Shown here: in pieces, positions 18,587 to 42,437 of the stretch
Numbering within the stretch: the first letter of the stretch is position 1
Layout: the number at the start of each line of letters is the position of its first letter
Assembly: GCF_006345805.1 (NCBI RefSeq)
Contig: NW_021835050.1
Span: 1-43,051, forward strand
Origin: Octopus sinensis
Taxonomy: Eukaryota
Direction of reading: 5' to 3'
DNA length: 43,051 nucleotides
Translations under genes and position numbers: made by a program
Notes under the pieces: model-generated
The model's input: only the letters and a program-made list of their open reading frames with translations
What the model was told of the DNA's origin: nothing
Database searches by the model: none

Positions 18587-18772
18587 CGTTGGCGATTTTT
18601 TTCCTCTGTATTCCCTATCTTGGATCTCTCCTTTTTCTTTGTTTCTGACGAAGAGCTCCGCTCGAAACGTTAAATCGTCCTTCTTTATTTCCTTTCCTGC
18701 GCGTCTGATAACACTATACTTGTTCCACGACCTCGCGATGTTGTGTTTTCTCTTTGTACTTTCATGTTTGGA

Positions 18773-21664: not shown

Positions 21665-21710
<46 letters not shown>

Positions 21711-21715
<5 letters not shown>

Positions 21716-21825
21716 ATAGAGGGCATTATTACACATAAATGCCTCACACTACGTGGGACAAAGTCATTACTACCAAAATTACACTAATCATACCTAATGC
21801 AGTTCTTCAAAGCAAGACATTTAAA
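21711..21825 (-). mobile_element. Solo, diverged fragment of the 480-bp HHR repeat unit
   Basis: attgtatagagggcattattacacataaatgcc...gcaagacatttaaa matches 33708-33822 with several substitutions and abuts (TA)n. Confidence 0.9.
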
Positions 21826-23782: not shown

Positions 23783-24722
23783 AAGGTGGTGAACTGGCAG
23801 AAACATTAGCACGCCGGGCGAAATGCTTAGCAGTATTTCGTCTGTCGCTACGTTCTGAGTTCAAATTCTGCCGAGGGCGACTTTGCCTTGCTTCCTTTCG
23901 GGGTCAATTAAATAAGTACGAGTTACGCACTGGGTTCGATGTAATAGATTTAATCCGTTTGTCTGTCCTTGTTTGTCCCCTCTGTGTTTAGCCCCTTGTG
24001 GGTAGTAAAGAAATAGGTATTACGTCTGCCGCTACGTTCTGAGTTCAAATTCCGCCGAGGTCGACTTTGCCTTGCTTCCTTTCGGGGTCGATTAAATAAG
24101 TACCAGTTTCGCACTGGGGTCGATGTAATCGACTTAATCCGTTTGTCTGTCCTTGTTAGTCGTCTGTGTTTAGCTCCTTGTGGGTAATAAAGAAATAGGT
24201 ATTTCGTCTATCGCTACGTTCTGAGTTCAAATTCTGCCGAGGTCGACTTTGCCTCTCTTCCTTTCGGGGTCGATTAAATAAGTACCAGTTTCACACTGGG
24301 ATCGATATAATTGACTTAATCTATTTGTCTGTCCTTGTTTGTCCCCTCTGTGTTTAGCCCCTTGTGGGTAGTAAAGAAATAGGTATTTCGTCTGTCTTTA
24401 CATTCTGAGTTCAAATTCCGCCGAGGTCGACTTTGCCTCTCTTCCTTTCGGGGTCGATAAATAAAGTACCAGTTACGCACTGGGGTCGATGTAACCGACT
24501 TAATCCGTTTATCTGCCCTTGTTTGTCCCCTCTATGTATAGCTCCTTGTGGGCAGTAAAGAAATAAGAATTGTTAGCACACCAGGCAGAACACCGATGTC
24601 GATTTTGCCTTTCACCCTTTCGGGGGTCGATAAATTAAGTACCAGTGAATCACTGGGGTCGATGTAGTTGGCTATCCTCCTCCCCCAAAATTTCAGGCCT
24701 TGTGCCTATAATAGAAAAGATT
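23783..24722 (+). mobile_element. Tandem array of SINE bodies (head, about four ~183-bp units, then a tail from a related subfamily)
   Basis: Units restart at gtattt/acgtctg near 23833, 24018, 24199 and 24382, each with ttctgagttcaaatt and cctttcggggtcgat..aagtaccag. Confidence 0.9.
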
Positions 24723-25089: not shown

Positions 25090-25502
25090 GGCGTAGGAGT
25101 GGCTGTGTGGTAAGTAGTTTGCCAACCAACCACATGGTTCCGGGTTCAGTCCCACTGCGTGGCACCTTGGGCAAGTGTCTTCTACTATAGCCTCGGGCCG
25201 AGCAAAGCCTTGTGAGTGGATTTGGTAGACGGAAACTGAAAGAAGCCCGTCGTATATATGTACATATTTATATATATGTATGTGTGTGTATATGTTTCTC
25301 TCTATATATTTGGCACCCCCCCCCCATCACTTGACAACCGATGCTGGTCTGTTTACGTCCCTGTAACTTAGCGGTTCGGCAAAAGAGTCCGATAGAATAA
25401 GTACTTACAAAGAATAAGTCCTGGGGTCGATTTGCTCGACTAAAGGCAGTGCTCCAGCATAGCCACAGTCAAATAACTGAAACGAGTAAAAGAGTAAAAG
25501 AG
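25090..25502 (+). mobile_element. SINE family 1, near full length
   Basis: tRNA-like head (tggctgtgtggtaag; ggttcagtccc), internal microsatellite and (AAAAGAGT) tail. Confidence 0.92.
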
Positions 25503-25634: not shown

Positions 25635-25940
25635 GTGGAAGCACGTGACCTAGTGGTTAGAGCCGTCGACTATCGGTCGAGGGATCACGGGTTAGAATCT
25701 CAGACCGGGCAATGTGTGTGTTTATGAGCGAAACACCTAAGCTCCACGCGGCCACGGCAAAAAGTAATGGCGAACCACTGCTGACTCTTTCGCTACAACT
25801 TTCTCTCATTCTTTCCTCCTCTATCTGGCAGCTCACCTGCGACGGACCGGCGTCGCGTCCAGGTGGGGAACCTATACGCCAAGGAAACTGGGAACCCGGC
25901 CCTTACGAGCCTGGAATGGCTCGAGAAGGAACGAACGACA
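25635..25940 (+). mobile_element. SINE family 2 variant
   Basis: The head (ctagtggttagag...cagaccgggc...aaacacctaagctccacg) is shared with 31768, but the 3' half differs. Confidence 0.8.
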
Positions 25941-26330: not shown

Positions 26331-26334
<4 letters not shown>

Positions 26335-26968
26335 GTGGGCCTGACAGAGGGTAATTTAATTTCAAGGCCAGGTTCAATAACCACACTTTGAGCTTTAGGC
26401 ACTGGAACAAAAGAAAAGCGACACAATTATCCAATCATATTTGGTCTTTAAGAGATAAAGGTGTCGATTATAACATACAATGGAAGATTTTGGCCAGATG
26501 TAAGCCCTATACTAACGGCAGCGGAAGGTGCGGTTTATGCGACATGGAGAGATGGCTTATCTGGAAAAGCAGCTTAGACCCTACCACATGTCTAAATACA
26601 AGGACAGAGCTTTTCGGATCATGCCCACATGTGACTAAATTTCTGTTACGTTTTTGGTCCCCTAAAGAAAACGGATAGAACATGCTTTCTGTGTTATGTC
26701 CCAAGAAGATTTTATATATTTTTATATATTTTTATATATTTTTATGTATTTTTATATAATTTTTATGACGAAAAATGCGAGCGATGTATAAGTACGCAGG
26801 CAAAGCAGAGTTATAACAGAGTAATTTCCCTTCATTTTTAACGGTATTTTTTCATAACGTTTTCAAATAGCCAGATAACCGAAGAGATGGTGTTGTGGAT
26901 TTCCACTTCGGCATCTGAAACTCAGAGTTTTATCTTGACTACCGAGTAATGTAACATATGTATAGATA
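26331..26968 (+). repeat. 5' pseudo-LTR of PLE-1
   Basis: Differs from 28920-29552 only by a 5-bp duplication and two 1-bp indels seen by eye. Confidence 0.95.
26873..26935 (+). ncRNA. Variant type I hammerhead-like motif, family A
   Basis: AGATAA-CCGAAGA-GATG..GTGG attt CCAC..CATC-T-GAAA-CTC a GAG-TT-TTATCT. Stems I, II and III all pair, but the core has U4C and an extra U. Confidence 0.6.
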
Positions 26969-27139
26969 ATTTTCCTCTATTTACATAATATTGAGGTCTC
27001 TTTCTTTCTTTTGTTATCTTACCGTTTTATCAATAAATCACCTCCCGGACGACGTTATTCTCAACTAAGAGCTAATACGACCTTTTTGGGATTATCGCCT
27101 AACATCGGTTGAGGACTCTCACAAACAAAAGAATCTAAT

Positions 27140-29261
27140 ATGGACGCATATCACATAGATTATTCTATGAAAAATATACCGATCCCATCAAAGGATTTTT
27201 ACTCTAAGAAACTTCTGCAAAAAATTACTGATGTAATTAAGCGTATGAGATGGAAGGCTTTCTTTTTTGATACAGAAGCGAACACCAAGGAAAACATTTG
27301 CTATCGGATAAAATCCAAAAAATTCCCTCCTAGGATTAAAGGCTTGGAAGATTTCGAAGCGGACCTGCTGAAGATCATGAGCAAAATAAAGTTTCGTAAG
27401 TCTTTTAACAATTTCCAACATAAATTGAAAAAAGATATTGATCATATAAAAAGCTCCAAGAAAAAAGCACTTTTTTCGGATAAAACCAAGAACTTATACC
27501 TGGTAGATAACAGCAAATACACACAACTCTTACACAACAGCATCATTAATAATTATACTAAGGCTAGGGCACAGACATATAACGAAATTAATAAAGAAGC
27601 TAGCGTCATCGCCGCTAAACTTAAATTAGATAAAAAATAGAAACCCTCCCCCAAAAAGAGGCCTTTATTACTATTAAAGACCACAAAGAAAACTTCCTTT
27701 CCAACCCTAAATGTAGGCTTATCAACCCAGCCAAGTCAGAACTAGGGATTATTAGCAAAGAAATTTTAGATAAAATAAATACGAAAATTAAGACCGATAC
27801 TAGGCTAGTGCAATGGTCCAATAGTATAGAAGTCGTAGACTGGTTTAAAGCTATTAAGAATAAGAAAAAGGCGAGGTTTACACAATTCGATATTGTTGAT
27901 TTTTATGCCTCTATCTCTAAAGAACTGCTAGATAAAGCCCTAATCTTCGCTAGTGACTTCATAGAAATTAGTACCAATGATAAGGATATAATCTTCCATG
28001 CTAGAAAGACATTACTTTTCAGTGAGAATGCAAAGTGGGTAAAAAACACCGACACGGAGGGCGCTTTCGATGTGAGCATGGGTTCATATGATGGGGCAGG
28101 CATCTGTGATCTAATTGGACTCTTTCTCCTAGATACCTTCGGTAAGACATTCCCTAACGTACATTTCGCCATCTACAAAGATGATGCCTCGCCTTAACAG
28201 CTAATACAAATGGACCAGCACAAGATCGTTTTAGGAAGGATATTATCCAGTTAATGAACACTTCGGACTTAGTATAACTATAGACACTAACCTGACGGTT
28301 GTCAATTTCTTAGACGTTTCCTTAGATCTTAATAATAATATTTATAAGCCTTATAGGAAGCCCAATGATAGACTAAGTTATATTAATGTAGGTTCATGCC
28401 ATCCCCCTATAGTATTCAAAAATTAGTTAAAAATATTAGTAAGAGGATTTCTAGCCTCTCATCTAATGAGGACATCTTCAATAGCGTTGCCCCAGTTTAT
28501 AATAAAGCTTTAAAAGATAGTGGTTTTAGCGAAAAAATAAAATATACACCTATCACCAGCCCAACAATAAGGAAAAGGAATAATAGAAATAGGAAGGTCA
28601 TCTGGTTTACGCCCCCTTACTCACCCGAGGTGGCCTTCAATATAGGTAAATATTTCCTAGCACTGATAGATAGACATTTTCCAGTTAACCATGCTTATAG
28701 GAAACTCTTTAATAGACACAATTTAAAAATTAGTTTTAGTTCAACTACCAATTTTAAAAACATAATCAATCATAACATACAAAAAACACAAGAAGAAAAC
28801 AGCTGTTCATGCAGGAATAAAGAATTGTGCCCGCTAAATGGAGCTTGCATGTCCAAGACCATCATATATGAAGCTACCGTAAACTCTATAACCACTAAAG
28901 ACACCGTTTCGACGAAGAAATACGTGGGCCTGACAGAGGGTAATTTCAAGGCCAGGTTCAATAACCACACTTTGAGCTTTAGGCACTGGAACAAAAGAAA
29001 AGCGACACAATTATCCAATCATATTTGGTCTTTAAGAGATAAGGTGTCGATTATAACATACAATGGAAGATTTTGGCCAGATGTAAGCCCTATACTAACG
29101 GCAGCGGAAGGTGCGGTTTATGCGACATGGAGAGATGGCTTATCTGGAAAAGCAGCTTAGACCCTACCACATGTCTAAATACAAGGACAGAGCTTTTCGG
29201 ATCATGCCCACATGTGACTAAATTTCTGTTACGTTTTTGGTCCCCTAAAGAAAACGGATAG
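27140..29261 (+). CDS. PLE polyprotein, RT plus C-terminal GIY-YIG endonuclease, about 700 aa after repairing five 1-bp deletions
   Basis: RT motifs FDIVDFYASI, MGSYDG and YKDD; NFLDVSLDL; WFTPPYS; CSC-x5-C-x5-C; IIYEA...YVGLT; CGLCDME; LNTRTE...CPH. Confidence 0.92.
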
Positions 29262-29552
29262 AACATGCTTTCTGTGTTATGTCCCAAGAAGATTTTATAT
29301 ATTTTTATATATTTTTATATATTTTTATGTATTTTTATATAATTTTTATGACGAAAAATGCGAGCGATGTATAAGTACGCAGGCAAAGCAGAGTTATAAC
29401 AGAGTAATTTCCCTTCATTTTTAACGGTATTTTTTCATAACGTTTTCAAATAGCCAGATAACCGAAGAGATGGTGTTGTGGATTTCCACTTCGGCATCTG
29501 AAACTCAGAGTTTTATCTTGACTACCGAGTAATGTAACATATTGTATAGATA
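28920..29552 (+). repeat. 3' pseudo-LTR of PLE-1
   Basis: Direct repeat of 26331-26968. Confidence 0.95.
29456..29518 (+). ncRNA. Variant hammerhead-like motif, family A, second copy
   Basis: Identical to 26873-26935. Confidence 0.6.
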
Positions 29553-30059
29553 TATATATATATATAATATATATACATATATATACACACACATACATAT
29601 ATATATGTATATATATATACATATATATATATATGTAATATATATATATATAATGTAATAGGCTGAACTCCATGCACGCGATATTTCGGTATCGTGTTTG
29701 CATCTAGTCCAGCAAATTACATTTATAACGGACCATGCTGATGATGGCTGCAGTTTTCTTGCGGAAAATAACAGCTGAAACTAATTTAGTACATGGGTAA
29801 TTATTTTATTTCGTATATTTTTCACTTGTTTATTGCTATGGTTTTGTGTTGAGTTTGATCTGAGAACATAATCTTTTGTGGTGAATGGCGATTTGACGTC
29901 TATATCTAGCATGTTGACTGTCCACTTTTCGTGTTCAGTCCTTAATTGGTATATATAAATATTTTAATCTTCGGATTCTTTTTTAATATGCTAGACCACT
30001 GGTCTTAATTGATAAATATCAATTTCTACCCTTAATTAATATTATATATATATATATAT

Positions 30060-31767: not shown

Positions 31768-32066
31768 GTGGAGGCGCAATGGCCCAGTGTTTAGGGCTGC
31801 GGACTTGCGGTCGTAGGATCGCGGTTTCGATTCCCAGACCGGGCGTTGTGAGTGTTTATTGAGCGTAAACACCTAAAAGCTCCACGAGACTCCGGCAGGG
31901 GTGGTGATCCCTGCTATACTCATTCGCCACAACTTTCACTCACTCTTTCTTCTGTTGGCCTGCTCGCTTAGCCAGCGGGGTGGCCTCATTCAAAGGTTAA
32001 AACAATGCGAACGGATTGTGACTAGCGATGTGTAACAACATCTGATGGTCTGGTCGGTCACGTGAT
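31768..32066 (+). mobile_element. SINE family 2, full length
   Basis: Reverse-complement match to 3878-4178. Confidence 0.92.
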
Positions 32067-32295: not shown

Positions 32296-32575
32296 CGAAT
32301 GTATGTATGTATGTATAAAATCAAAATATGCAACAAGGATATCCAGAGGTAATGCAGTACGAACGTTTCATGCAACTCCATTTAATTAGACAATACAATC
32401 ATTTCATTACATCAATTTAAAATGTAGAGCAATCTTCAGCTGCACAAAGACATAGAATTTAATTAAATTAGAACAGAAGGACACATTAGTATAATTTTAC
32501 CTAAGATCTCCACGAAGTTAGGTTGATAGACAAAGAACATGTTTTACCTACAACATCATAGTTGTATATATACAT

Positions 32576-32715
32576 ACAACGGGTTTCTTTCAGTTTCCGT
32601 CAACCAAATTCACTCACAAGGCTTTTGTCAGCGTGAGGCTTTTGTAGAAGACACTTGCCCAAGGTGCCACACAGTGGGACTGAACCTGGAACCTTGTGCT
32701 TGGGAAGCAAACTTA
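32576..32715 (-). mobile_element. SINE family 1 head
   Basis: tttcagtttccgtc...gtagaagacacttgcccaaggtgcc...gtgggactgaacc. Confidence 0.85.
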
Positions 32716-32993: not shown

Positions 32994-33362
32994 GGAGGCG
33001 CAATGGCCAAGTGGTTTGGGCAGCAGACTCGCGGTCGGAGGATCGCGGTTTCGATTCCCAGACTGGGCGTTGTATGTGTTTATTGATCGAAAACACCTAA
33101 AGCTCCACGAGGCTCCGGCAGGGGGTGGTGACGACCCCTGTTGTACTCTTTCGCTCCAACTTTCTCTCATTCTTTCTTCCTGTTTCTTGTCCCCGACTCC
33201 TTACGCAACCGCTGAGCCTGGATGCGCTTTCATCCGTCCGTCGATGCTCTCGGTGTCGGAGGTTGACCTGCTTTCTCTTCTGCGGGTCTTATGAATAGCA
33301 AAGGACCACGTTTCGGACTTCTCCCACCTTGCGAGCTCTGCGACGAAGACCGTTCGCTCAAC
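32994..33362 (+). mobile_element. SINE family 2 variant
   Basis: Same tRNA-like head as 31768 with a different 3' half, followed by an (AAC/ATC)n tail. Confidence 0.85.
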
Positions 33363-33637
33363 AGCAATAGCAACAGCATCAACATCAACATCATCAGCAT
33401 CAACATCATCATCGTCAGCATCACCATCATCATCGTCATCGTCGTTGTCATCTTTATGTTCCCCTCCTCTTCCTCCTCATCATCGTCATTATCATCATTA
33501 TCGTCGATATCGTCTTCGTCGTCGTTCGTAATAGGGTCGGATAACTAGCACATTGAGGCTAGTCTATACATATACACCAATAAATATATATATACACACA
33601 TACATATCACCTACATACAAATACATACATATATATA

Positions 33638-33706
<69 letters not shown>

Positions 33707-33834
33707 TATTGTATAGAGGGCATTATTACACATAAATGCCTCACACTAGGAGGGACAAAGTCATTACTACCAAAAATTATACTAATCATACCCAAATGCA
33801 GTTTTTCAAAGCAAGACATTTAAAAATGAATTAT

Positions 33835-33890
33835 GTTCTGTATCACCGTGATTTCACATACAACTTGCGTCTAATGATCGTCAGCAGAAC
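33835..33890 (-). ncRNA. Type I hammerhead ribozyme, family B
   Basis: Reverse complement of the motif at 35669-35724. Confidence 0.8.
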
Positions 33891-34313
33891 TGATTCTGAT
33901 ACATCATAAATAAACTACCAACCTTACGTAGCGGAGACGAACAGACAACTGCTCACTCCGGCCAAGCACATGGAATGTTTATAAATCATATATCCGGTAA
34001 ATGGCGGGCTTTTTACGAACTGCATGTCGGGTAATGAAAAGTATTTCGGAATAAGTTTAACAATTAAGGATAATCTCTTAATAAGGGATCTTAACAAGAA
34101 ATTATCGGGTAGCTAGCGTGAAAACCTCATAAAAGAAAAGAATCCGAAAATAATTTTTTTCTTTTGAACAAATTAATTATATCTATATTGTATAGAGGGC
34201 ATTATTACACATAAATGCCTCACACTAGGAGGGACAAAGTCATTACTACCAAAAATTATACTAATCATACCCAAATGCAGTTTTTCAAAGCAAGACATTT
34301 AAAAATGAATTAT

Positions 34314-34369
34314 GTTCTGTATCACCGTGATTTCACATACAACTTGCGTCTAATGATCGTCAGCAGAAC
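34314..34369 (-). ncRNA. Type I hammerhead ribozyme, family B
   Basis: Same motif. Confidence 0.8.
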
Positions 34370-34794
34370 TGATTCTGAATACATCATAAATAAACTACCA
34401 ACCTTACGTAGCGGAGACGAACAGACAACTGCTCACTCCGGCCAAGCACATGGAATGTTTATAAATCATATATCCGGTAAATGGCGGGCTTTTTACGAAC
34501 TGCATGTCGGGTAATGAAAAGTATTTCGGAATAAGTTTAACAATTAAGGATAATCTCTTAATAAGGGATCTTAACAAGAAATTATCGGGTAGCTAGCGTG
34601 AAAACCTCATAAAAGAAAAGAATCCGAAAATAATTTTTTTCTTTTGAACAAATTAATTATATCTATATTGTATAGAGGGCATTATTACACATAAATGCCT
34701 CACACTAGGAGGGACAAAGTCATTACTAACCAAAAATTATACTAATCATACCCAAATGCAGTTTTTCAAAGCAAGACATTTAAAAATGAATTAT

Positions 34795-34850
34795 GTTCTG
34801 TATCACCGTGATTTCACATACAACTTGCGTCTAATGATCGTCAGCAGAAC
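34795..34850 (-). ncRNA. Type I hammerhead ribozyme, family B
   Basis: Same motif. Confidence 0.8.
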
Positions 34851-35668
34851 TGATTCTGAATACATCATAAATAAACTACCAACCTTACGTAGCGGAGACG
34901 AACAGACAACTGCTCACTCCGGCCAAGCACATGGAATGTTTATAAATCATATATCCGGTAAATGGCGGGCTTTTTACGAACTGCATGTCGGGTAATGAAA
35001 AGTATTTCGGAATAAGTTTAACAATTAAGGATAATCTCTTAATAAGGGATCTTAACAAGAATTATCGGGTAGCTAGCGTGAAAACCTCATAAAAGAAAAG
35101 AATCCGAAAATAATTTTTTTCTTTTGAACAAATTAATTATATCTATATTGTATAGAGGGCATTATTACACATAAATGCCTCACACTAGGAGGGACAAAGT
35201 CATTACTACCAAAAATTATACTAATCATACCCAAATGCAGTTTTTCAAATGTTTTTAAATGTCTTGCTTTGAAAAACTGCATTTGGGTATGATTAGTATA
35301 ATTTTTGGTAGTAATGACTTTGTCCCTCCTAGTGTGAGGCATTTATGTGTAATAATGCCCTCTATACAATATAGATATAATTAATTTGTTCAAAAGAAAA
35401 AAAATTATTTTCGGATTCTTTTCTTTTATGAGGTTTTCACGCTAGCTACCCGATAATTTCTTGTTAAGATCCCTTATTAAGAGATTATCCTTAATTGTTA
35501 AACTTATTCCGAAATACTTTTCATTACCCGACATGCAGTTCGTAAAAAGCCCGCCATTTACCGGATATATGATTTATAAACATTCCATGTGCTTGGCCGG
35601 AGTGAGCAGTTGTCTGTTCGTCTCCGCTACGTAAGGTTGGTAGTTTATTTATGATGTATTCAGAATCA

Positions 35669-35724
35669 GTTCTGCTGACGATCATTAGACGCAAGTTGTA
35701 TGTGAAATCACGGTGATACAGAAC
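35669..35724 (+). ncRNA. Type I hammerhead ribozyme, family B
   Basis: GTTCTG-CTGACGA-T CAT ta GAC gcaa GTT gt ATG T-GAAA-TCAC g GTGA-TA-CAGAAC. Stem I is 6 bp perfect, stem III is near-palindromic, and AUA cleavage is predicted after 35718. Confidence 0.8.
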
Positions 35725-36146
35725 ATAATTCATTTTTAAATGTCTTGCTTTGAAAAACTGCATTTGGGTATGATTAGTATAATTTTTGGTAGTAATGACT
35801 TTGTCCCTCCTAGTGTGAGGCATTTATGTGTAATAATGCCCTCTATACAATATAGATATAATTAATTTGTTCAAAAGAAAAAAATTATTTTCGGATTCTT
35901 TTCTTTTATGAGGTTTTCACGCTAGCTACCCGATAATTTCTTGTTAAGATCCCTTATTAAGAGATTATCCTTAATTGTTAAACTTATTCCGAAATACTTT
36001 TCATTACCCGACATGCAGTTCGTAAAAAGCCCGCCATTTACCGGATATGATTTATAAACATTCCATGTGCTTGGCCGGAGTGAGCAGTTGTCTGTTCGTC
36101 TCCGCTACGTAAGGTTGGTAGTTTATTTATGATGTATTCAGAATCA

Positions 36147-36202
36147 GTTCTGCTGACGATCATTAGACGCAAGTTGTATGTGAAATCACGGTGATACAGA
36201 AC
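36147..36202 (+). ncRNA. Type I hammerhead ribozyme, family B
   Basis: Same motif. Confidence 0.8.
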
Positions 36203-36625
36203 ATAATTCATTTTTAAATGTCTTGCTTTGAAAAACTGCATTTGGGTATGATTAGTATAATTTTTGGTAGTAATGACTTTGTCCCTCCTAGTGTGAGGCA
36301 TTTATGTGTAATAATGCCCTCTATACAATATAGATATAATTAATTTGTTCAAAAGAAAAAAATTATTTTCGGATTCTTTTCTTTTATGAGGTTTTCACGC
36401 TAGCTACCCGATAATTTCTTGTTAAGATCCCTTATTAAGAGATTATCCTTAATTGTTAAACTTATTCCGAAATACTTTTCATTACCCGACATGCAGTTCG
36501 TAAAAAGCCGCCATTTACCGGATATATGATTTATAAACATTCCATGTGCTTGGCCGGAGTGAGCAGTTGTCTGTTCGTCTCCGCTACGTAAGGTTGGTAG
36601 TTTATTTATGATGTATTCAGAATCA

Positions 36626-36681
36626 GTTCTGCTGACGATCATTAGACGCAAGTTGTATGTGAAATCACGGTGATACAGAAC
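36626..36681 (+). ncRNA. Type I hammerhead ribozyme, family B
   Basis: Same motif. Confidence 0.8.
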
Positions 36682-36940
36682 ATAATTCATTTTTAATGTC
36701 TTGCTTTGAAAAACTGCATTTGGGTATGATTAGTATAATTTTTGGTAGTAATGACTTTGTCCCTCCTAGTGTGAGGCATTTATGTGTAATAATGCCCTCT
36801 ATACAATATAGATATAATTAATTTGTTCAAAAGAAAAAAATTATTTTCGGATTCTTTTCTTTTATGAGGTTTTCACGCTAGCTACCCGATAATTTCTTGT
36901 TAAGATCCCTTATTAAGAGATTATCCTTAATTGTTAAACT

Positions 36941-36975
<35 letters not shown>

Positions 36976-37022
36976 TTGTATGTAGGTGTATATGTATGTG
37001 TGTATATATATATTTATTGGTG

Positions 37023-37067
<45 letters not shown>

Positions 37068-38013
37068 TTGTATGTAGGTGTATATGTATGTGTGTATATA
37101 TATATATATTTATTGGTGTATATGTATAGACTAGCCTTCTAAGAGTGTAGACATGAATCTGTAGGTACGCGTACGTATGAGTATATACGTGAATGTATGT
37201 AGATGTATGTATTTATGAATATAACGCGTGCGTGCGTGTATGTGTATGAGTGTACGAATGAGTGAGTGTACGTGCTAATGAGTGTGCGTGCGTGAATGAG
37301 TGCTTGTTTTCAAGTAGACAGATAAATGGACTTGCTGTCATAGCCAAGATCCTTGGACCAGCGGTCAAAGATAACAAAAGTAATAAATGAAGATAATAAA
37401 ATTAAAATTAGGGAATGGGTCTGTATTTGTATGTATATATATGTGTGTATGTGTAGGTATGTATAGGTACACATATGTATATATATATATATATATAATG
37501 CCTTACCACATACCGAATTTAGAAGGGAGATCTCAGTAAAATGATAGATTGCAGTCAATTCATTCTCTCTTACCTGTTTGTGCCTTCCAAATGCTGTTTT
37601 TACTGAGATCTCCCTTTTTAGTAGAAGAAATAGCTATAACCCTTTGACTGCTATTTCTAAATTCGGTATGTGGTAAGGCAACTCGTTGCTAAACCCTTAT
37701 TGCTTAGTATTACTTAAATTTTCCTCGAATGAGGCTTTTACATGCCGAAGACTACTTGGTGTAATTGATAATTTTTCCAAATTAATTAATTTCACCCTTC
37801 ATTATTACGGATAACCATATTTTATCTCAGTAGATGACCACAGCATCTTGTTTTGGCTACACGCGGGTGGGAAGGGGCTGTTGACACAATCGTTTCATTC
37901 ACAAATTGAATTCGGTGATACCAGTTGCGGTTCTAGCTCGCTCTGATACTGAGTGGAGTTGGTGCCTTCTGGTATCTCAAAATTCAATATATAATCATTT
38001 ATGATTATAGTAT

Positions 38014-38127
38014 TCTACGCTGAAGAGAAAAGAAGTTTCGGTAAGATAGAATTATTTATTATTTAATATTTAATATTTAATTCGTATGCTTTCCTTAAAA
38101 CTTGATTTCGAAACGTACGTCCGTGGA
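38014..38127 (+). ncRNA. Type I hammerhead ribozyme with a long stem II, family C
   Basis: TCTACG-CTGAAGA-GAAA..(~75 nt)..TTTC-GAAA-CGTACG-TC-CGTGGA. Canonical core, palindromic stem III, GUC cleavage predicted after 38121. Confidence 0.85.
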
Positions 38128-38615
38128 TAACTAAAAAATGTATGATAGATTGCAGTCAATTCATTCTCTCTTACCTGTTTGTGCCTTCCAAATGCTGTTT
38201 TTACTGAGATCTCCCTTTTTAGTAGAAGAAATAGCTATAACCCTTTGACTGCTATTTCTAAATTCGGTACGTGGTAAGGCAACTCGTTGCTAAACCCTTA
38301 TTGCTTAGTATTACTTAAATTTTCCTCGAATGAGGCTTTTACATGCCGAAGACTACTTGGTGTAATTGATAATTTTTCCAAATTAATTAATTTCACCCTT
38401 CATTATTACGGATAACCATATTTTATCTCAGTAGATGACCACAGCATCTTGTTTTGGCTACACGCGGGTGGGAAGGGGCTGTTGACACAATCGTTTCATT
38501 CACAAATTGAATTCGGTGATACCAGTTGCGGGTTCTAGCTCGCTCTGATACTGAGTGGAGTTGGTGCCTTCTGGTATCTCAAAATTCAATATATAATCAT
38601 TTATGATTATAGTAT

Positions 38616-38729
38616 TCTACGCTGAAGAGAAAAGAAGTTTCGGTAAGATAGAATTATTTATTATTTAATATTTAATATTTAATTCGTATGCTTTCCTTAA
38701 AACTTGATTTCGAAACGTACGTCCGTGGA
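38616..38729 (+). ncRNA. Type I hammerhead ribozyme, family C
   Basis: Same motif. Confidence 0.85.
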
Positions 38730-39215
38730 TAACTAAAAAAATGTATGATAGATTGCAGTCAATTCATTCTCTCTTACCTGTTTGTGCCTTCCAAATGCTG
38801 TTTTTACTGAGATCTCCCTTTTTAGTAGAAGAAATAGCTATAACCTTGACTGCTATTTCTAAATTCGGTATGTGGTAAGGCAACTCGTTGCTAAACCCTT
38901 ATTGCTTAGTATTACTTAAATTTTCCTCGAATGAGGCTTTTACATGCCGAAGACTACTTGGTGTAATTGATAATTTTTCCAAATTAATTAATTTCACCCT
39001 TCATTATTACGGATAACCATATTTTATCTCAGTAGATGACCACAGCATCTTGTTTTGGCTACACGCGGGGGGAAGGGGCTGTTGACACAATCGTTTCATT
39101 CACAAATTGAATTCGGTGATACCAGTTGCGGGTTCTAGCTCGCTCTGATACTGAGTGGAGTTGGTGCCTTCTGGTATCTCAAAATTCAATATATAATCAT
39201 TTATGATTATAGTAT

Positions 39216-39327
39216 TCTACGCTGAAGAGAAAAGAAGTTTCGGTAAGATAGAATTATTTATTATTTAATATTAATATTAATTCGTATGCTTTCCTTAAAA
39301 CTTGATTTCGAAACGTACGTCCGTGGA
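39216..39327 (+). ncRNA. Type I hammerhead ribozyme, family C
   Basis: Same motif, with two 1-bp deletions in the stem II apex. Confidence 0.85.
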
Positions 39328-39810
39328 TAAAAAAAAATGTATGATAGATTGCAGTCAATTCATTCTCTCTTACCTGTTTGTGCCTTCCAAATGCTGTTTT
39401 TACTGAGATCTCCCTTTTTAGTAGAAGAAATAGCTATAACCCTTTGACTGCTATTTCTAAATTCGGTATGTGGTAAGGCAACTCGTTGCTAAACCTTATT
39501 GCTTAGTATTACTTAAATTTTCCTCGAATGAGGCTTTTACATGCCGAAGACTACTTGGTGTAATTGATAATTTTTCCAAATTAATTAATTTCACCCTTCA
39601 TTATTACGGATAACCATATTTTATCTCAGTAGATGACCACAGCATCTTGTTTTGGCTACACGCGGGTGGAAGGGCTTGTTGACACAATCGTTTCATTCAC
39701 AAATTGAATTTGTGATACCAGTTGCGGGTTCTAGCTCGCTCTGATACTGAGTGGAGTTGGTGCCTTCTGGTATCTCAAAATTCAATATATATCATTTATG
39801 ATTATAGTAT

Positions 39811-39924
39811 TCTACGCTGAAGAGAAAAGAAGTTTCGGTAAGATAGAATTATTTATTATTTAATATTTAATATTTAATTCGTATGCTTTCCTTAAAACTT
39901 GATTTCGAAACGTACGTCCGTGGA
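39811..39924 (+). ncRNA. Type I hammerhead ribozyme, family C
   Basis: Same motif. Confidence 0.85.
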
Positions 39925-40103
39925 TAACTAAAAAAATGTATGATAGATTGCAGTCAATTCATTCTCTCTTACCTGTTTGTGCCTTCCAAATGCTGTTTTT
40001 ACTGAGATCTCCCTTTTTAGTAGAAGAAATAGCTATAACCTTGACTGCTATTTCTAAATTCGGTATGTGGTAAGGCAACTCGTTGCTAAACCCTTATTGC
40101 TTA

Positions 40104-40161
<58 letters not shown>

Positions 40162-40685
40162 ATGTATGTGTATGTTATATATGTGTGTATGTGTATATAT
40201 GTGTATATAGGGACTAGTGTGCTGTGTGTGCATGTGTGTATGTGTGTATGTTATATATATTTTTCTGTGTGTATATGTATGTGTGGTCGTGTGTGTATAT
40301 ACATGTTGTATACGTGTATGCATGTGAGTGATGTATGTTGTATATATATATGTGTACGTGTAGATATGTATATGTATGTGAGGTATATATATGTATATGT
40401 GTGTGTGTGTATGTATGTGGTATGTATTATAGTATGTATGTGTGTGTATATATGTATACATATGTGTATAGGTATAAGTGAGAATCTCCTTATTTACCTA
40501 AAACTCTATTTTTATATATATATTTTTTTATTTTTTTATTTATTCTTTTATCTAATTTACCACTGACTCCTTGACCACTCCCCCAAGTATGATATTTTGC
40601 GCTATGCCTACCCCCAAAAAGTCCCCCACCACCACCCCTTTAAACCTGCCTAAATGTATAAATGCCAATACAATTCTTGTTAACT

Positions 40686-40736
40686 AGCTTCCTGAAGATT
40701 TCTCTTGAATGAAACAGTTCTAGTCCTGTAGAAGCT
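40686..40736 (+). ncRNA. Type I hammerhead ribozyme, family D
   Basis: Identical to 9927-9977 and followed by ccttc then (TA)n. Confidence 0.85.
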
Positions 40737-40738
40737 CC

Positions 40739-40773
<35 letters not shown>

Positions 40774-42070: not shown

Positions 42071-42437
42071 GGCGCAGGGGTTACTGTGTGGTGCCAAGTT
42101 CAATCCTATTGTATGGAAAGTGTCTTCTACAATAGCCTCGGGCTGACCAAAGCCTTGGGAGTGGATTTGGTAGACGGAAACTGAAAGAACCCCGTCGTAT
42201 ATATGTATACATATGTATGTGTGTGTGCCTTTGTGTCTATGATTGCCACCCCACCACCATTTGAAACCCGGTGTTGGTGTGTTTACGTCCCCATAACTTA
42301 GCGGTTCGTTAAATGAGACCAACAGAATAAGTACTAAGCTTTAAAAATAAGTACTGGACTCGATTCATTCGCCTAAAAATTCAAGGTGTTGCTCCAGCCC
42401 GGCCGCATCTATTGACTGAAACAAGTAAAAGATAAAA
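42071..42437 (+). mobile_element. SINE family 1 with an internal deletion in the head
   Basis: Colinear with 25090-25502. Confidence 0.88.

What the first reader, a model, noticed from the sequence alone, without database searches (positions are those of the whole stretch)
33708..36942. 3.2-kb palindrome of 480-bp units with six outward-facing hammerheads
Each full unit carries one HHR and no recognisable RT. Transcription of either arm would give self-cleaving ~480-nt monomers, the architecture of non-LTR retrozymes, though longer than the few-hundred-nt monomers I recall for animals. Read-through of both arms would instead give long dsRNA. The units are nearly identical, indicating a very recent origin.
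Basis: partly seen in the sequence, partly recalled or inferred. Interest (0 to 1): 0.88.

Follow-up and report, generated by a model that had tools for sequence, protein, structure and literature searches.

The report
Mirror-image hammerhead retrozyme repeat array
This is a very young, non-coding 478-bp tandem repeat carrying one hammerhead-type self-cleaving RNA motif per unit (a "non-LTR retrozyme"), present as two mirror-image arms inside a TA microsatellite. It is a new example of a known kind of animal mobile element, and its ends show how such elements are probably copied into DNA.

Summary
Units of 478-481 bp form two inverted arms, 33697-35249 and 35252-36943, around an 18-nt spacer. 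Each arm has three identical hammerhead-like motifs facing outward. The mirror is larger than reported: it also covers the TA microsatellite and about 92 bp of flank (33557-37136).

Rfam's hammerhead models do not score the motif. It nevertheless has the full catalytic core and type I topology. A structural descriptor finds five unrelated motif families in this window, against 0.03 hits expected by chance, and their helices covary. The U.U at the base of helix II has a published, active precedent in axolotl.

The monomer is non-coding, has 34% GC, and folds far better than shuffles (z about -6). A degraded reverse transcriptase/GIY-YIG element lies about 4 kb away.

Outer ends join (TA)n through TA microhomology. 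Inner ends lie 15-31 nt downstream of the predicted ribozyme cut. A solo fragment and the neighbouring 602-bp array have the same kind of ends, and that array also starts with an inverted piece.

Best reading: a non-LTR retrozyme array inserted by Penelope-like target-primed reverse transcription and mirrored at the cut 5' end of its RNA template. An assembly fold-back artefact remains possible (about 0.2). It is a new member of a known kind, of moderate interest.

The parts
33557..33696 (.). Left outer part of the mirror. It is an inverted copy (F') of the right-hand flank block plus an (AT)n tract. The breakpoint to unrelated sequence lies at 33556/33557.
   Evidence: F' equals the right flank block apart from one 1-nt indel. 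A paralogous copy at 6150 (rc) continues past GACTAGCC as the right flank does, whereas the left copy breaks there.
33697..35249 (-). Left arm of the array. The sense strand is the - strand. It runs from monomer nt 31, through two full units, to nt 144, where it joins (AT)n.
33835..33890 (-). Hammerhead-like motif, left arm copy 3. Predicted cut between 33841 and 33840.
34314..34369 (-). Hammerhead-like motif, left arm copy 2. Predicted cut between 34320 and 34319.
34795..34850 (-). Hammerhead-like motif, left arm copy 1. Predicted cut between 34801 and 34800.
35250..35267 (.). 18-nt asymmetric spacer at the centre of the mirror (TGTTTTTAAATGTCTTGC). It is a 2-nt filler followed by 16 nt of unit sequence that only the right arm has.
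   Evidence: (pair I18)
35252..36943 (+). Right arm of the array. The sense strand is the + strand. It runs from monomer nt 15, through two full units, to nt 269, where it joins (TA)n.
35669..35724 (+). Hammerhead-like motif, right arm copy 1: GUUCUG-CUGACGA-U-CAU..GAC GCAA GUU..AUG-U-GAA-AUCA CGG UGAU-A^CAGAAC. Predicted cut at 35718^35719.
36147..36202 (+). Hammerhead-like motif, right arm copy 2. Predicted cut at 36196^36197.
36626..36681 (+). Hammerhead-like motif, right arm copy 3. Predicted cut at 36675^36676.
35719..36196 (+). One complete predicted monomer RNA, cut site to cut site: 478 nt, 34% GC, non-coding.
   Evidence: linear MFE -124.9 kcal/mol, z -5.3. (circular MFE -119.4, z -6.2; antisense -100.5). 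(the 99-aa ORF of the unit, on the strand antisense to the hammerhead, has no homologue).
36944..37136 (.). Right outer part of the mirror: (TA)n, flank block F, (TA)n, then a second F. Its sequence continues into the flank exactly as in the paralogue at 5777-6345.
21702..21825 (-). Solo 126-bp fragment of the same unit (94% identical). It covers monomer nt 17 to about nt 144, has the same junction to (TA)n as the left arm, and lies between microsatellites.

Best explanation
The locus is a very young array of a non-autonomous, non-coding retroelement of the non-LTR retrozyme type.

Proposed life cycle:
1. Each 478-nt unit, when transcribed on its sense strand, can fold a type I hammerhead that cuts after ...GGUGAUA. 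This releases monomers with a 5'-OH at CAGAAC....
2. By analogy with published retrozymes, these monomers are ligated into highly base-paired circular RNAs.
3. The RNA is copied into DNA by the reverse transcriptase/GIY-YIG endonuclease of a Penelope-like element (PLE).
4. A nicked (TA)n microsatellite end pairs with a UA-rich stretch of the RNA and primes cDNA synthesis.
5. More-than-unit-length copying gives the tandem units.
6. Synthesis ends where the template ends, about 15-20 nt from the ribozyme cut.

The mirror arose at that 5' end. The new strand most likely turned back on itself (snap-back or template switch) and recopied the array, the (TA)n tract and ~92 nt of flank. It slipped once from the unit's own AUAUA stretch into the (TA)n tract.

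Shown here: the anatomy, the motif statistics, the RNA folding, the microhomologies, the positions of the ends, and the filled versus empty paralogous site for the neighbouring array.

Inferred: self-cleavage, circular RNA, which RT does the copying, and the snap-back step.
For: 1. The hammerhead core and topology are present in all six units. Stem I is 6 bp, followed by CUGACGA. Helix II is 3 bp, a 2x2 internal loop, 3 bp and a GCAA loop. Then come GAA, a helix III of 4 bp with a triloop, and A17.
2. The active fold lies within 1.2 kcal/mol of the MFE.
3. The descriptor finds 14 hits in 5 unrelated families in this window, against 0.033 expected. The cores are invariant while all three helices covary.
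4. A U.U mismatch at the base of helix II occurs in axolotl HHR_Amex2, which self-cleaves. [quoted passage not shown]
5. The monomer has 34% GC and no coding capacity. Its circular MFE is -119.4 kcal/mol against -90.2 +/- 4.7 for shuffles (z -6.2). The sense strand is more stable than the antisense strand. These are the published retrozyme traits.
6. All four outer ends of arrays A and B, and the outer end of the solo fragment, abut (TA)n with 1-5 nt of TA microhomology. (TA)n is a preferred PLE target.
7. Sense 5' ends lie at nt 15 (array A right arm), nt 17 (solo fragment) and nt 21 (array B) after the respective cut sites. The chance of all three falling within the first 21 nt is about 7e-5.
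8. Array B is an insertion into (TA)n relative to a paralogous empty site. It also begins with an inverted piece of its own unit. PLE insertions typically carry an inverted 5'-truncated copy at the 5' end.
9. RT (YxDD) plus C-terminal GIY-YIG ORF remnants, with a partial tandem duplication, lie at 26331-29552.
10. Both arms contain the same number of full units, and F' is a near-exact copy of F. This fits a mirror copy rather than two independent insertions.
Against: - No Rfam hammerhead covariance model reports this motif or the other families in the window, even on slices of about 100 nt at E<=10.
- The 76-nt motif region alone does not fold better than shuffles (z +0.56).
- The 10.1/11.1 position is U.U rather than the usual G-C, which in axolotl goes with weak monomeric cleavage.
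- No homologous copies from other genomes could be retrieved. Conservation of this particular family is therefore untested.
- The inverted copy of flank DNA is not a described feature of PLE insertions, and the snap-back step is my inference.
- A near-perfect palindrome with 1.5-kb arms and an 18-nt spacer would be unstable in most genomes.
- All differences between units look like long-read errors, so an assembly artefact cannot be excluded.
- No expression data are available.
Confidence: 0.55

Rival explanations
1. The retrozyme array is real, but the mirror image was made later by a purely DNA-level event, unrelated to reverse transcription. Examples are replication template switching or break-induced fold-back, helped by the self-complementary (TA)n tracts.
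For: - The mirror includes the (TA)n tract and ~92 nt of flank DNA, which RNA-templated insertion does not predict.
- Both arms have the same number of full units.
- The left boundary is a simple breakpoint to unrelated sequence.
- (TA)n tracts are self-complementary and sit on both sides.
Against: - The centre of the mirror lies 15-31 nt from the ribozyme cut site. A random fold-back point would fall that close only about 4-6% of the time.
- The same kind of 5' end is seen in the solo fragment and in array B, which also has an inverted head.
Confidence: 0.2
2. The mirror is an assembly artefact. A fold-back or chimeric long read (both strands of one molecule read in series) was built into the contig, and the genome holds only a single array of about 3.5 units.
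For: - The arms carry no substitutions, only private 1-2-nt indels typical of long-read error.
- The spacer is only 18 nt.
- Long near-perfect palindromes are unstable in vivo (general knowledge).
- Complex PLE-type structures are known to trouble assemblies.
Against: - The mirror is bounded on both sides by different unique sequence, so a second chimeric junction at 33556/7 would also be needed.
- The arms differ structurally at their outer ends: a 125-nt difference, one versus two flank blocks, and different (TA)n lengths.
- A turning point at a random fragment end would not be expected next to the ribozyme cut site.
- The neighbouring array B shows a small version of the same head-to-head layout.
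Confidence: 0.18
3. It is ordinary satellite DNA, and the hammerhead-like motif is a dead relic. The repeat grows only by unequal crossing-over, and no self-cleaving or circular RNA is made.
For: - Rfam models do not recognise the motif.
- There is a U.U at 10.1/11.1 and an internal loop in helix II.
- The motif alone has no significant folding z-score.
- No expression data and no orthologues are available.
Against: - The core is intact in all copies.
- The descriptor statistics and the covariation across five families argue for selection on the fold.
- The whole monomer is strongly and strand-specifically structured.
- Insertion footprints are present: a solo fragment, TA microhomology, 5' ends near the cut site, and a filled versus empty site for the neighbouring array.
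Confidence: 0.07

Closest known systems
Non-LTR retrozymes of animals (Cervera & de la Pena 2020, PMC7229834; Li et al. 2026 preprint, 10.64898/2026.07.22.740005)
   Same: [quoted passage not shown]
- Low GC, no ORF, no LTR.
- A strongly self-paired monomer.
- Co-occurrence with Penelope-like elements.
- Unit length within the published 51-972 bp range.
   Different: - This sequence family has no retrievable relatives.
- Here the array is mirrored head-to-head, with the flank included. The papers I read do not describe this for retrozyme arrays.
- RNA expression and cleavage have not been shown for this locus.
Axolotl HHR_Amex2 hammerhead (retrozyme Rtz_353)
   Same: It has a U.U mismatch at the base of helix II and a helix III that is more stable than in newt-type motifs. 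It sits in a tandem repeat.
   Different: - There is no sequence similarity.
- Helix II here is longer, with an internal loop and a GNRA loop.
- Helix III here is 4 bp with a triloop.
- Activity has not been measured here. Amex2 gave 22% cleavage in 1 h as a monomer and more as a dimer.
Penelope-like element insertions (Craig et al. 2021, PMC8557442; Cervera & de la Pena 2014, PMC4209133)
   Same: - (TA)n target preference.
- Partial tandem copies.
- An inverted 5'-truncated copy abutting the 5' end.
[quoted passage not shown]
- Pairs of hammerheads on opposite strands a few hundred bp apart.
   Different: - The unit encodes no RT or endonuclease, so it is non-autonomous.
- The unit has no detectable sequence similarity to the RT/GIY-YIG element in the window.
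- The inverted duplication extends into flank DNA.
L1 5' inversions by twin priming, and hairpin (snap-back) self-priming by reverse transcriptases
   Same: Head-to-head junctions of two cDNA-derived segments, with their 5' ends meeting in the middle and short fillers or microhomology at the junction.
   Different: - Different element class and enzyme.
- Here the template is a multimeric or circular ribozyme RNA.
- The mirrored part includes target DNA, which twin priming does not give.

Membership tests
Hammerhead ribozyme, type I | Conserved core: C3 U4 G5 A6 N7 G8 A9 ... G12 A13 A14 ... A15.1-U16.1, H17 | tested here: met
   CUGACGA, GAA, the A15.1-U16.1 pair and A17 are present in all six copies.
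Hammerhead ribozyme, type I | Three helices around the core, with helix I open and helices II and III capped by loops | tested here: met
   Helix I is 6 bp, then an internal loop and 4 more bp. Helix II is 3+3 bp with a GCAA loop. Helix III is 4 bp. Position 10.1/11.1 is U.U rather than G-C. This variant has a precedent.
Hammerhead ribozyme, type I | Match beyond chance, and helices kept by compensatory change among relatives | tested here: met
   0.033 descriptor hits are expected per shuffled window, against 5 families (14 hits) observed. All helix positions covary across the families. Covariation within family A itself could not be tested because all copies are identical.
Hammerhead ribozyme, type I | Score at or above the Rfam gathering threshold for a hammerhead covariance model | tested here: not met
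   No hammerhead hit at the gathering threshold, at E<=10 on 3.9 kb, or at E<=10 on 86 nt. The other families in the window are also missed.
Hammerhead ribozyme, type I | [quoted passage not shown] | not testable with these tools
   This needs in vitro transcription or RNA end mapping.
Non-LTR retrozyme | Head-to-tail tandem repeats (dimers to multimers) of about 50-1000 bp, each with one type I hammerhead | tested here: met
   The spacing is 478-481 bp. Each arm holds about 3.2-3.5 unit lengths (two complete cut-to-cut monomers plus partial units at both ends), with one motif per unit and three motifs per arm.
Non-LTR retrozyme | Non-coding, low GC (<45-50%), no LTRs | tested here: met
   GC is 34%. 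The only ORF (99 aa, antisense) has no homologue. There are no terminal direct repeats other than the units themselves. PBS and PPT motifs were not searched for.
Non-LTR retrozyme | Monomer RNA predicted to be highly self-paired | tested here: met
   z -5.3 when folded as a linear RNA and z -6.2 as a circular RNA, with 66% of bases paired.
Non-LTR retrozyme | Co-occurrence with Penelope-like elements in the same genome | tested here: met
   [quoted passage not shown] Homologues of 39-46% identity have the same layout. A 99%-identical partial tandem lies at 26331-26968 / 28920-29552. Assignment to a PLE clade was not tested.
Non-LTR retrozyme | Expressed as linear and circular monomer RNA | not testable with these tools
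   No transcriptome of the source organism was available. The organism was not identified.
Penelope-like element (autonomous) | Encodes an RT plus a GIY-YIG endonuclease | tested here: not met
   The 478-bp unit has no such ORF. It can therefore only be a non-autonomous passenger.
PLE-type insertion architecture | Microsatellite ((TA)n) target, tandem copies, and an inverted 5'-truncated copy at the 5' end | tested here: met
   compared with the description.

The most novel reading that the evidence does not exclude
The mirror is a direct genomic footprint of reverse transcription running off the ribozyme-cut 5' end of the RNA template and snapping back on itself. In that case hammerhead self-cleavage would set the end-point of cDNA synthesis for retrozymes and PLEs. 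Such insertions would also create natural hairpin-RNA loci able to feed small-RNA silencing of the same element.
Probability: 0.3. Interest if true: 0.65.

Novelty: new member of a known kind. Interest (0 to 1): 0.45.

Why it matters
How animal retrozymes and Penelope-like elements integrate is still unknown. There is no in vitro system, and their tandem/inverted insertions and microsatellite bias remain unexplained.

This one window holds an unusually clean set of young insertion footprints:
- a filled versus empty paralogous site;
- TA microhomology at every outer (3') junction examined;
- sense 5' ends 15-21 nt from two unrelated ribozyme cut sites;
- two head-to-head junctions.

If a genome-wide survey confirms these patterns, three things follow. 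It would link ribozyme cleavage to template end definition. It would support target-primed copying of self-cleaved or circular RNA. It would also identify a lineage in which hammerheads with an unpaired U or a U.U at the base of helix II predominate and escape Rfam-based annotation.

The mirror locus is also a candidate natural source of long hairpin RNA.

Tried and rejected
- Rfam gave nothing for hammerheads. I tried the gathering threshold, E<=10 on the region, E<=10 on the whole window, and slices of about 100 nt around three motif families. The whole-window run was swamped by microsatellite-driven miRNA false hits. The miRNA-like hits at 35180-35337 simply reflect the centre of the palindrome.
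- The search for relatives failed. The unit's 99-aa ORF has no homologue among 5.8 billion proteins. Exact or degenerate DNA patterns are absent from the metagenome and viral contig collections. The unit is absent from the four fetched loci.
- The organism could not be identified. No tRNA genes were found. SINE-like sequence words are not in the literature library. A SINE-derived ORF matched only an unnamed Logan run. The impression that this is a cephalopod rests on memory only and is not claimed.
- PDB and Pfam could not classify the RT part of the neighbouring element.
- I considered a DNA transposon with terminal inverted repeats (F'/F as TIRs) and rejected it. The right F continues into its flank exactly as in a paralogue that has no left partner.
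- I considered two independent insertions (pure twin priming) for the two arms. This is disfavoured because the flank block is mirrored too and both arms have the same number of full units.
- A possible motif at 18645 (CUGACGA-A-GAGC UCC GCUC-GAAAC...) lacks helix I and was not counted.
Full report
**1. What is in the sequence**

The region holds tandem copies of a 478-481-bp unit in two inverted arms. The left arm is 33697-35249 and the right arm is 35252-36943. The innermost inverted pair, 35107-35249 and 35268-35410, is separated by 18 nt (pair I18).

I split each arm at the predicted ribozyme cut sites. The right arm then runs from monomer nt 15, through two full units, to nt 269. The left arm runs from nt 31, through two full units, to nt 144. 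Across about 3.2 kb there are no substitutions. There are only seven private 1-2-nt indels, in homopolymer or dinucleotide runs. That pattern fits either a very young array or residual long-read error.

The mirror is larger than the finding states. Outside each arm lies a (TA)n tract and then a ~92-nt block (F). The left copy of F, from 33557 onward, is an inverted and nearly identical copy of the right one. The right F is duplicated. It continues into its flank exactly as a paralogous copy at 5777-6345 does. The left copy breaks off at 33556/7 into unrelated sequence. The right side is therefore the original, and the left side (array plus flank) is the inverted duplicate.

**2. Is there a hammerhead?**

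Rfam says no. There is no hit at the gathering threshold, none at E<=10 on 3.9 kb, and none at E<=10 on an 86-nt slice. The 76-nt motif region alone does not fold better than shuffles.

The sequence itself says yes at the level of a descriptor. Every unit carries GUUCUG-CUGACGA-U-CAU-UA-GAC-GCAA-GUU-GU-AUG-U-GAA-AUCA-CGG-UGAU-A^CAGAAC. This contains the complete core. It has a 6-bp helix I, extended in the fold by an internal loop and 4 more bp, so the topology is type I. Helix II is capped by a GNRA loop. Helix III has 4 bp. A17 is present. This fold lies within 1.2 kcal/mol of the MFE.

I scanned the whole window with a descriptor requiring:
- helix I of at least 5 bp;
- CUGANGA;
- helix II of at least 3 bp, allowing one unpaired base at its foot;
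- GAAA;
- helix III of at least 2 bp;
- H17.

It found 14 hits in five unrelated families:
- A: the six copies in this locus.
- B: four copies in a 602-bp tandem array at 37541-40107.
- C: 9933 and 40692.
- D: 29738.
- E: 32439, on the minus strand.

In 300 dinucleotide-preserving shuffles a slightly stricter form of the descriptor, in which the unpaired base must be on both sides of the foot of helix II, gave 0.033 hits per window. The cores are identical across families, while every helix position changes and keeps pairing. Four of the five families have a U after A9, and three of those also have a U before G12.

This variant is precedented in two ways. Axolotl HHR_Amex2 has a U.U mismatch at the base of helix II and self-cleaves, at 22% per hour as a monomer and better as a dimer. 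PLE hammerheads usually have an unpaired base at the 5' end of a long helix II. Rfam also misses families C and D. I therefore read the negative Rfam result as a limit of the models rather than as evidence of absence. It remains a failed membership criterion and is listed as such.

**3. Retrozyme traits**

- The monomer (35719-36196) has 34% GC.
- Its only ORF (99 aa, antisense) has no homologue.
- It folds at -124.9 kcal/mol against -96.2 +/- 5.4 for shuffles (z -5.3).
- As a circle it folds at -119.4 kcal/mol (z -6.2), with 66% of bases paired. The antisense strand reaches only -100.5.
- Monomer B behaves the same way (z -6.1).

These are the published properties of animal non-LTR retrozymes: tandem type I hammerhead repeats, low GC, no LTR, and highly self-paired circular RNAs.

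A candidate autonomous partner lies about 4 kb to the left. [quoted passage not shown] Homologues at 39-46% identity have the same layout. There is also a 99%-identical partial tandem at 26331-26968 / 28920-29552, of the kind PLEs form. Neither unit A nor unit B has detectable sequence similarity to this element.

**4. Insertion footprints**

- All outer (3') ends abut (TA)n with 1-5 nt of TA microhomology. The junctions are: A right arm ...AAACTTAT|(AT)n; A left arm ...CAATATA|(TA)n; array B ...CTTAGTAT|(AT)n; and the inverted head of B.
- A solo 126-bp fragment of unit A at 21702-21825 has the same 3' junction as the left arm.
- A paralogous copy of the right flank (5053-6345, reverse) runs straight from 37497 to 40136. 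Array B (37498-40135) is therefore an insertion into a (TA)n tract.
- The sense 5' ends fall at nt 15 (A right arm), nt 17 (solo fragment) and nt 21 (B) after the respective predicted cut sites. The inner end of the left arm is at nt 31. The chance that three independent ends fall in the first 21 nt of units of 478-602 nt is about 7e-5.
- Array B also begins with an inverted piece of its own unit. This piece is the reverse complement of nt 78-160, with a hairpin deleted, and lies at 37499-37541.

PLE insertions are described as follows. They are partial tandems, often with an inverted 5'-truncated copy abutting the 5' end. They have a microsatellite, notably (TA)n, target bias. Pairs of PLE hammerheads on opposite strands are also on record. 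The head-to-head layout is therefore part of the known behaviour of this element class.

**5. How the mirror probably arose**

Two independent primings (twin priming) would explain the head-to-head ends. They would not explain the mirrored flank block or the equal number of full units in the two arms. A mirror copy explains both.

The centre sits just downstream of the ribozyme cut, as do the 5' ends of the solo fragment and of array B. For this reason I favour a snap-back or template switch of the nascent strand when reverse transcription reached the cut 5' end of the template. The strand would then have recopied the array, the (TA)n tract and ~92 nt of flank. One slip from the unit's AUAUA stretch (nt 144) into the (TA)n tract would account for the 125-nt difference between the arms and for the single flank block on the left. 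This step is inference.

Two rivals remain:
- A DNA-level fold-back unrelated to reverse transcription. The position of the centre would then be a 4-6% coincidence.
- An assembly fold-back artefact. This would need a second chimeric junction, and would not predict the structural asymmetry of the outer ends or the position of the centre. It is favoured by the error-like differences between units and by the expected instability of such a palindrome.

I put these at about 0.2 and 0.18. The dead-satellite reading is at about 0.07.

**6. Consequences**

The motifs face outward, so sense transcripts run from the centre outward and would self-process. A transcript entering from either flank would read one arm antisense and the other sense. 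It could fold into a ~1.5-kb hairpin. That is a plausible source of small RNAs but is entirely untested.

**7. Verdict**

The locus is a new member of the non-LTR retrozyme kind, in an unidentified AT-rich, microsatellite-dense animal genome. Its value lies in the clean footprints that link (TA)n target priming, ribozyme-defined template ends and head-to-head junctions.

No related sequences or expression data could be obtained with the tools at hand.

Noticed in passing
window 37498-40135: A second retrozyme-like tandem array: a 602-bp unit, about 4.3 copies, 98.6% identical. Each unit has a hammerhead with a canonical G10.1-C11.1 pair, a ~70-nt insert in helix II and a GAAAC-GUAC-GUC helix III (CTGAAGA at 38020, 38622, 39222, 39817). 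It is an insertion into (TA)n relative to the paralogue at 5777-5800, and it starts with an inverted piece of its own unit (37499-37541). Its monomer folds with z -6.1.
   Followed up: yes
window 9933-9983 and 40692-40742 (+); paralogous elements 9209-9994, 40109-40770 and 5053-5853 (reverse): A compact 51-nt hammerhead-like motif (AGCUUC-CUGAAGA-U-UUC UCUU GAA-U-GAA-ACAG...CUGU-A^GAAGCU). It lies near the 3' end of a dispersed ~0.7-1.3-kb repeat that ends in (TA)n. The copy at 5053-5853 has lost the motif.
   Followed up: partly
window 29733-29796 (+) and 32346-32445 (-): Two further single hammerhead-like motifs (families D and E). Each has a U after A9. D lies just after the (TA)n tract that follows the RT/GIY-YIG element.
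   Followed up: partly
window 26331-29552: A degraded retroelement. Its ORFs are in broken frames and carry a YxDD-type RT motif and a C-terminal Cys-rich linker plus GIY-YIG nuclease. A 99%-identical partial tandem (26331-26968 = 28920-29552) is followed by (TA)n. The layout is Penelope-like. The closest relatives are unnamed ENA metagenome proteins at 39-46% identity.
   Followed up: partly
window 18645-18700 (+): A hammerhead core with good helices II and III (CUGACGA-A-GAGC UCC GCUC-GAAAC GUUAAAUC GUC) but no helix I in cis. It may be a relic or a half-motif.
   Followed up: no
window 23833-24673: A tandem array of a 184-bp unit (about 4 copies, 80-90% identical) whose sequence looks SINE-like. 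ARAGORN finds no tRNA gene anywhere in the window.
   Followed up: no
window 31770-31956, 32994-33184, 3997-4195, 25646-25826; also 32563-32713, 25116-25262, 42115-42437: Two families of short dispersed repeats. One has a tRNA-like head (GGAGGCGCAATGGCC...GGTTTCGATTCCC). They flank the palindrome on the left. The second family is also found in Logan runs SRR11869390/1 at 76% identity.
   Followed up: partly
window 33544-33563: At the left breakpoint of the mirror, ACTAGC (unique side) and GCTAGT (start of F') form a 6-bp inverted repeat 8 nt apart. This may be a trace of how the junction formed, or it may be chance.
   Followed up: no
whole window: The density of TA, TATG, ATAC and TG microsatellites is extreme (188 TRF rows). 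These drive hundreds of spurious Rfam miRNA hits (mir-297, mir-466, mir-3149) at permissive thresholds.
   Followed up: no
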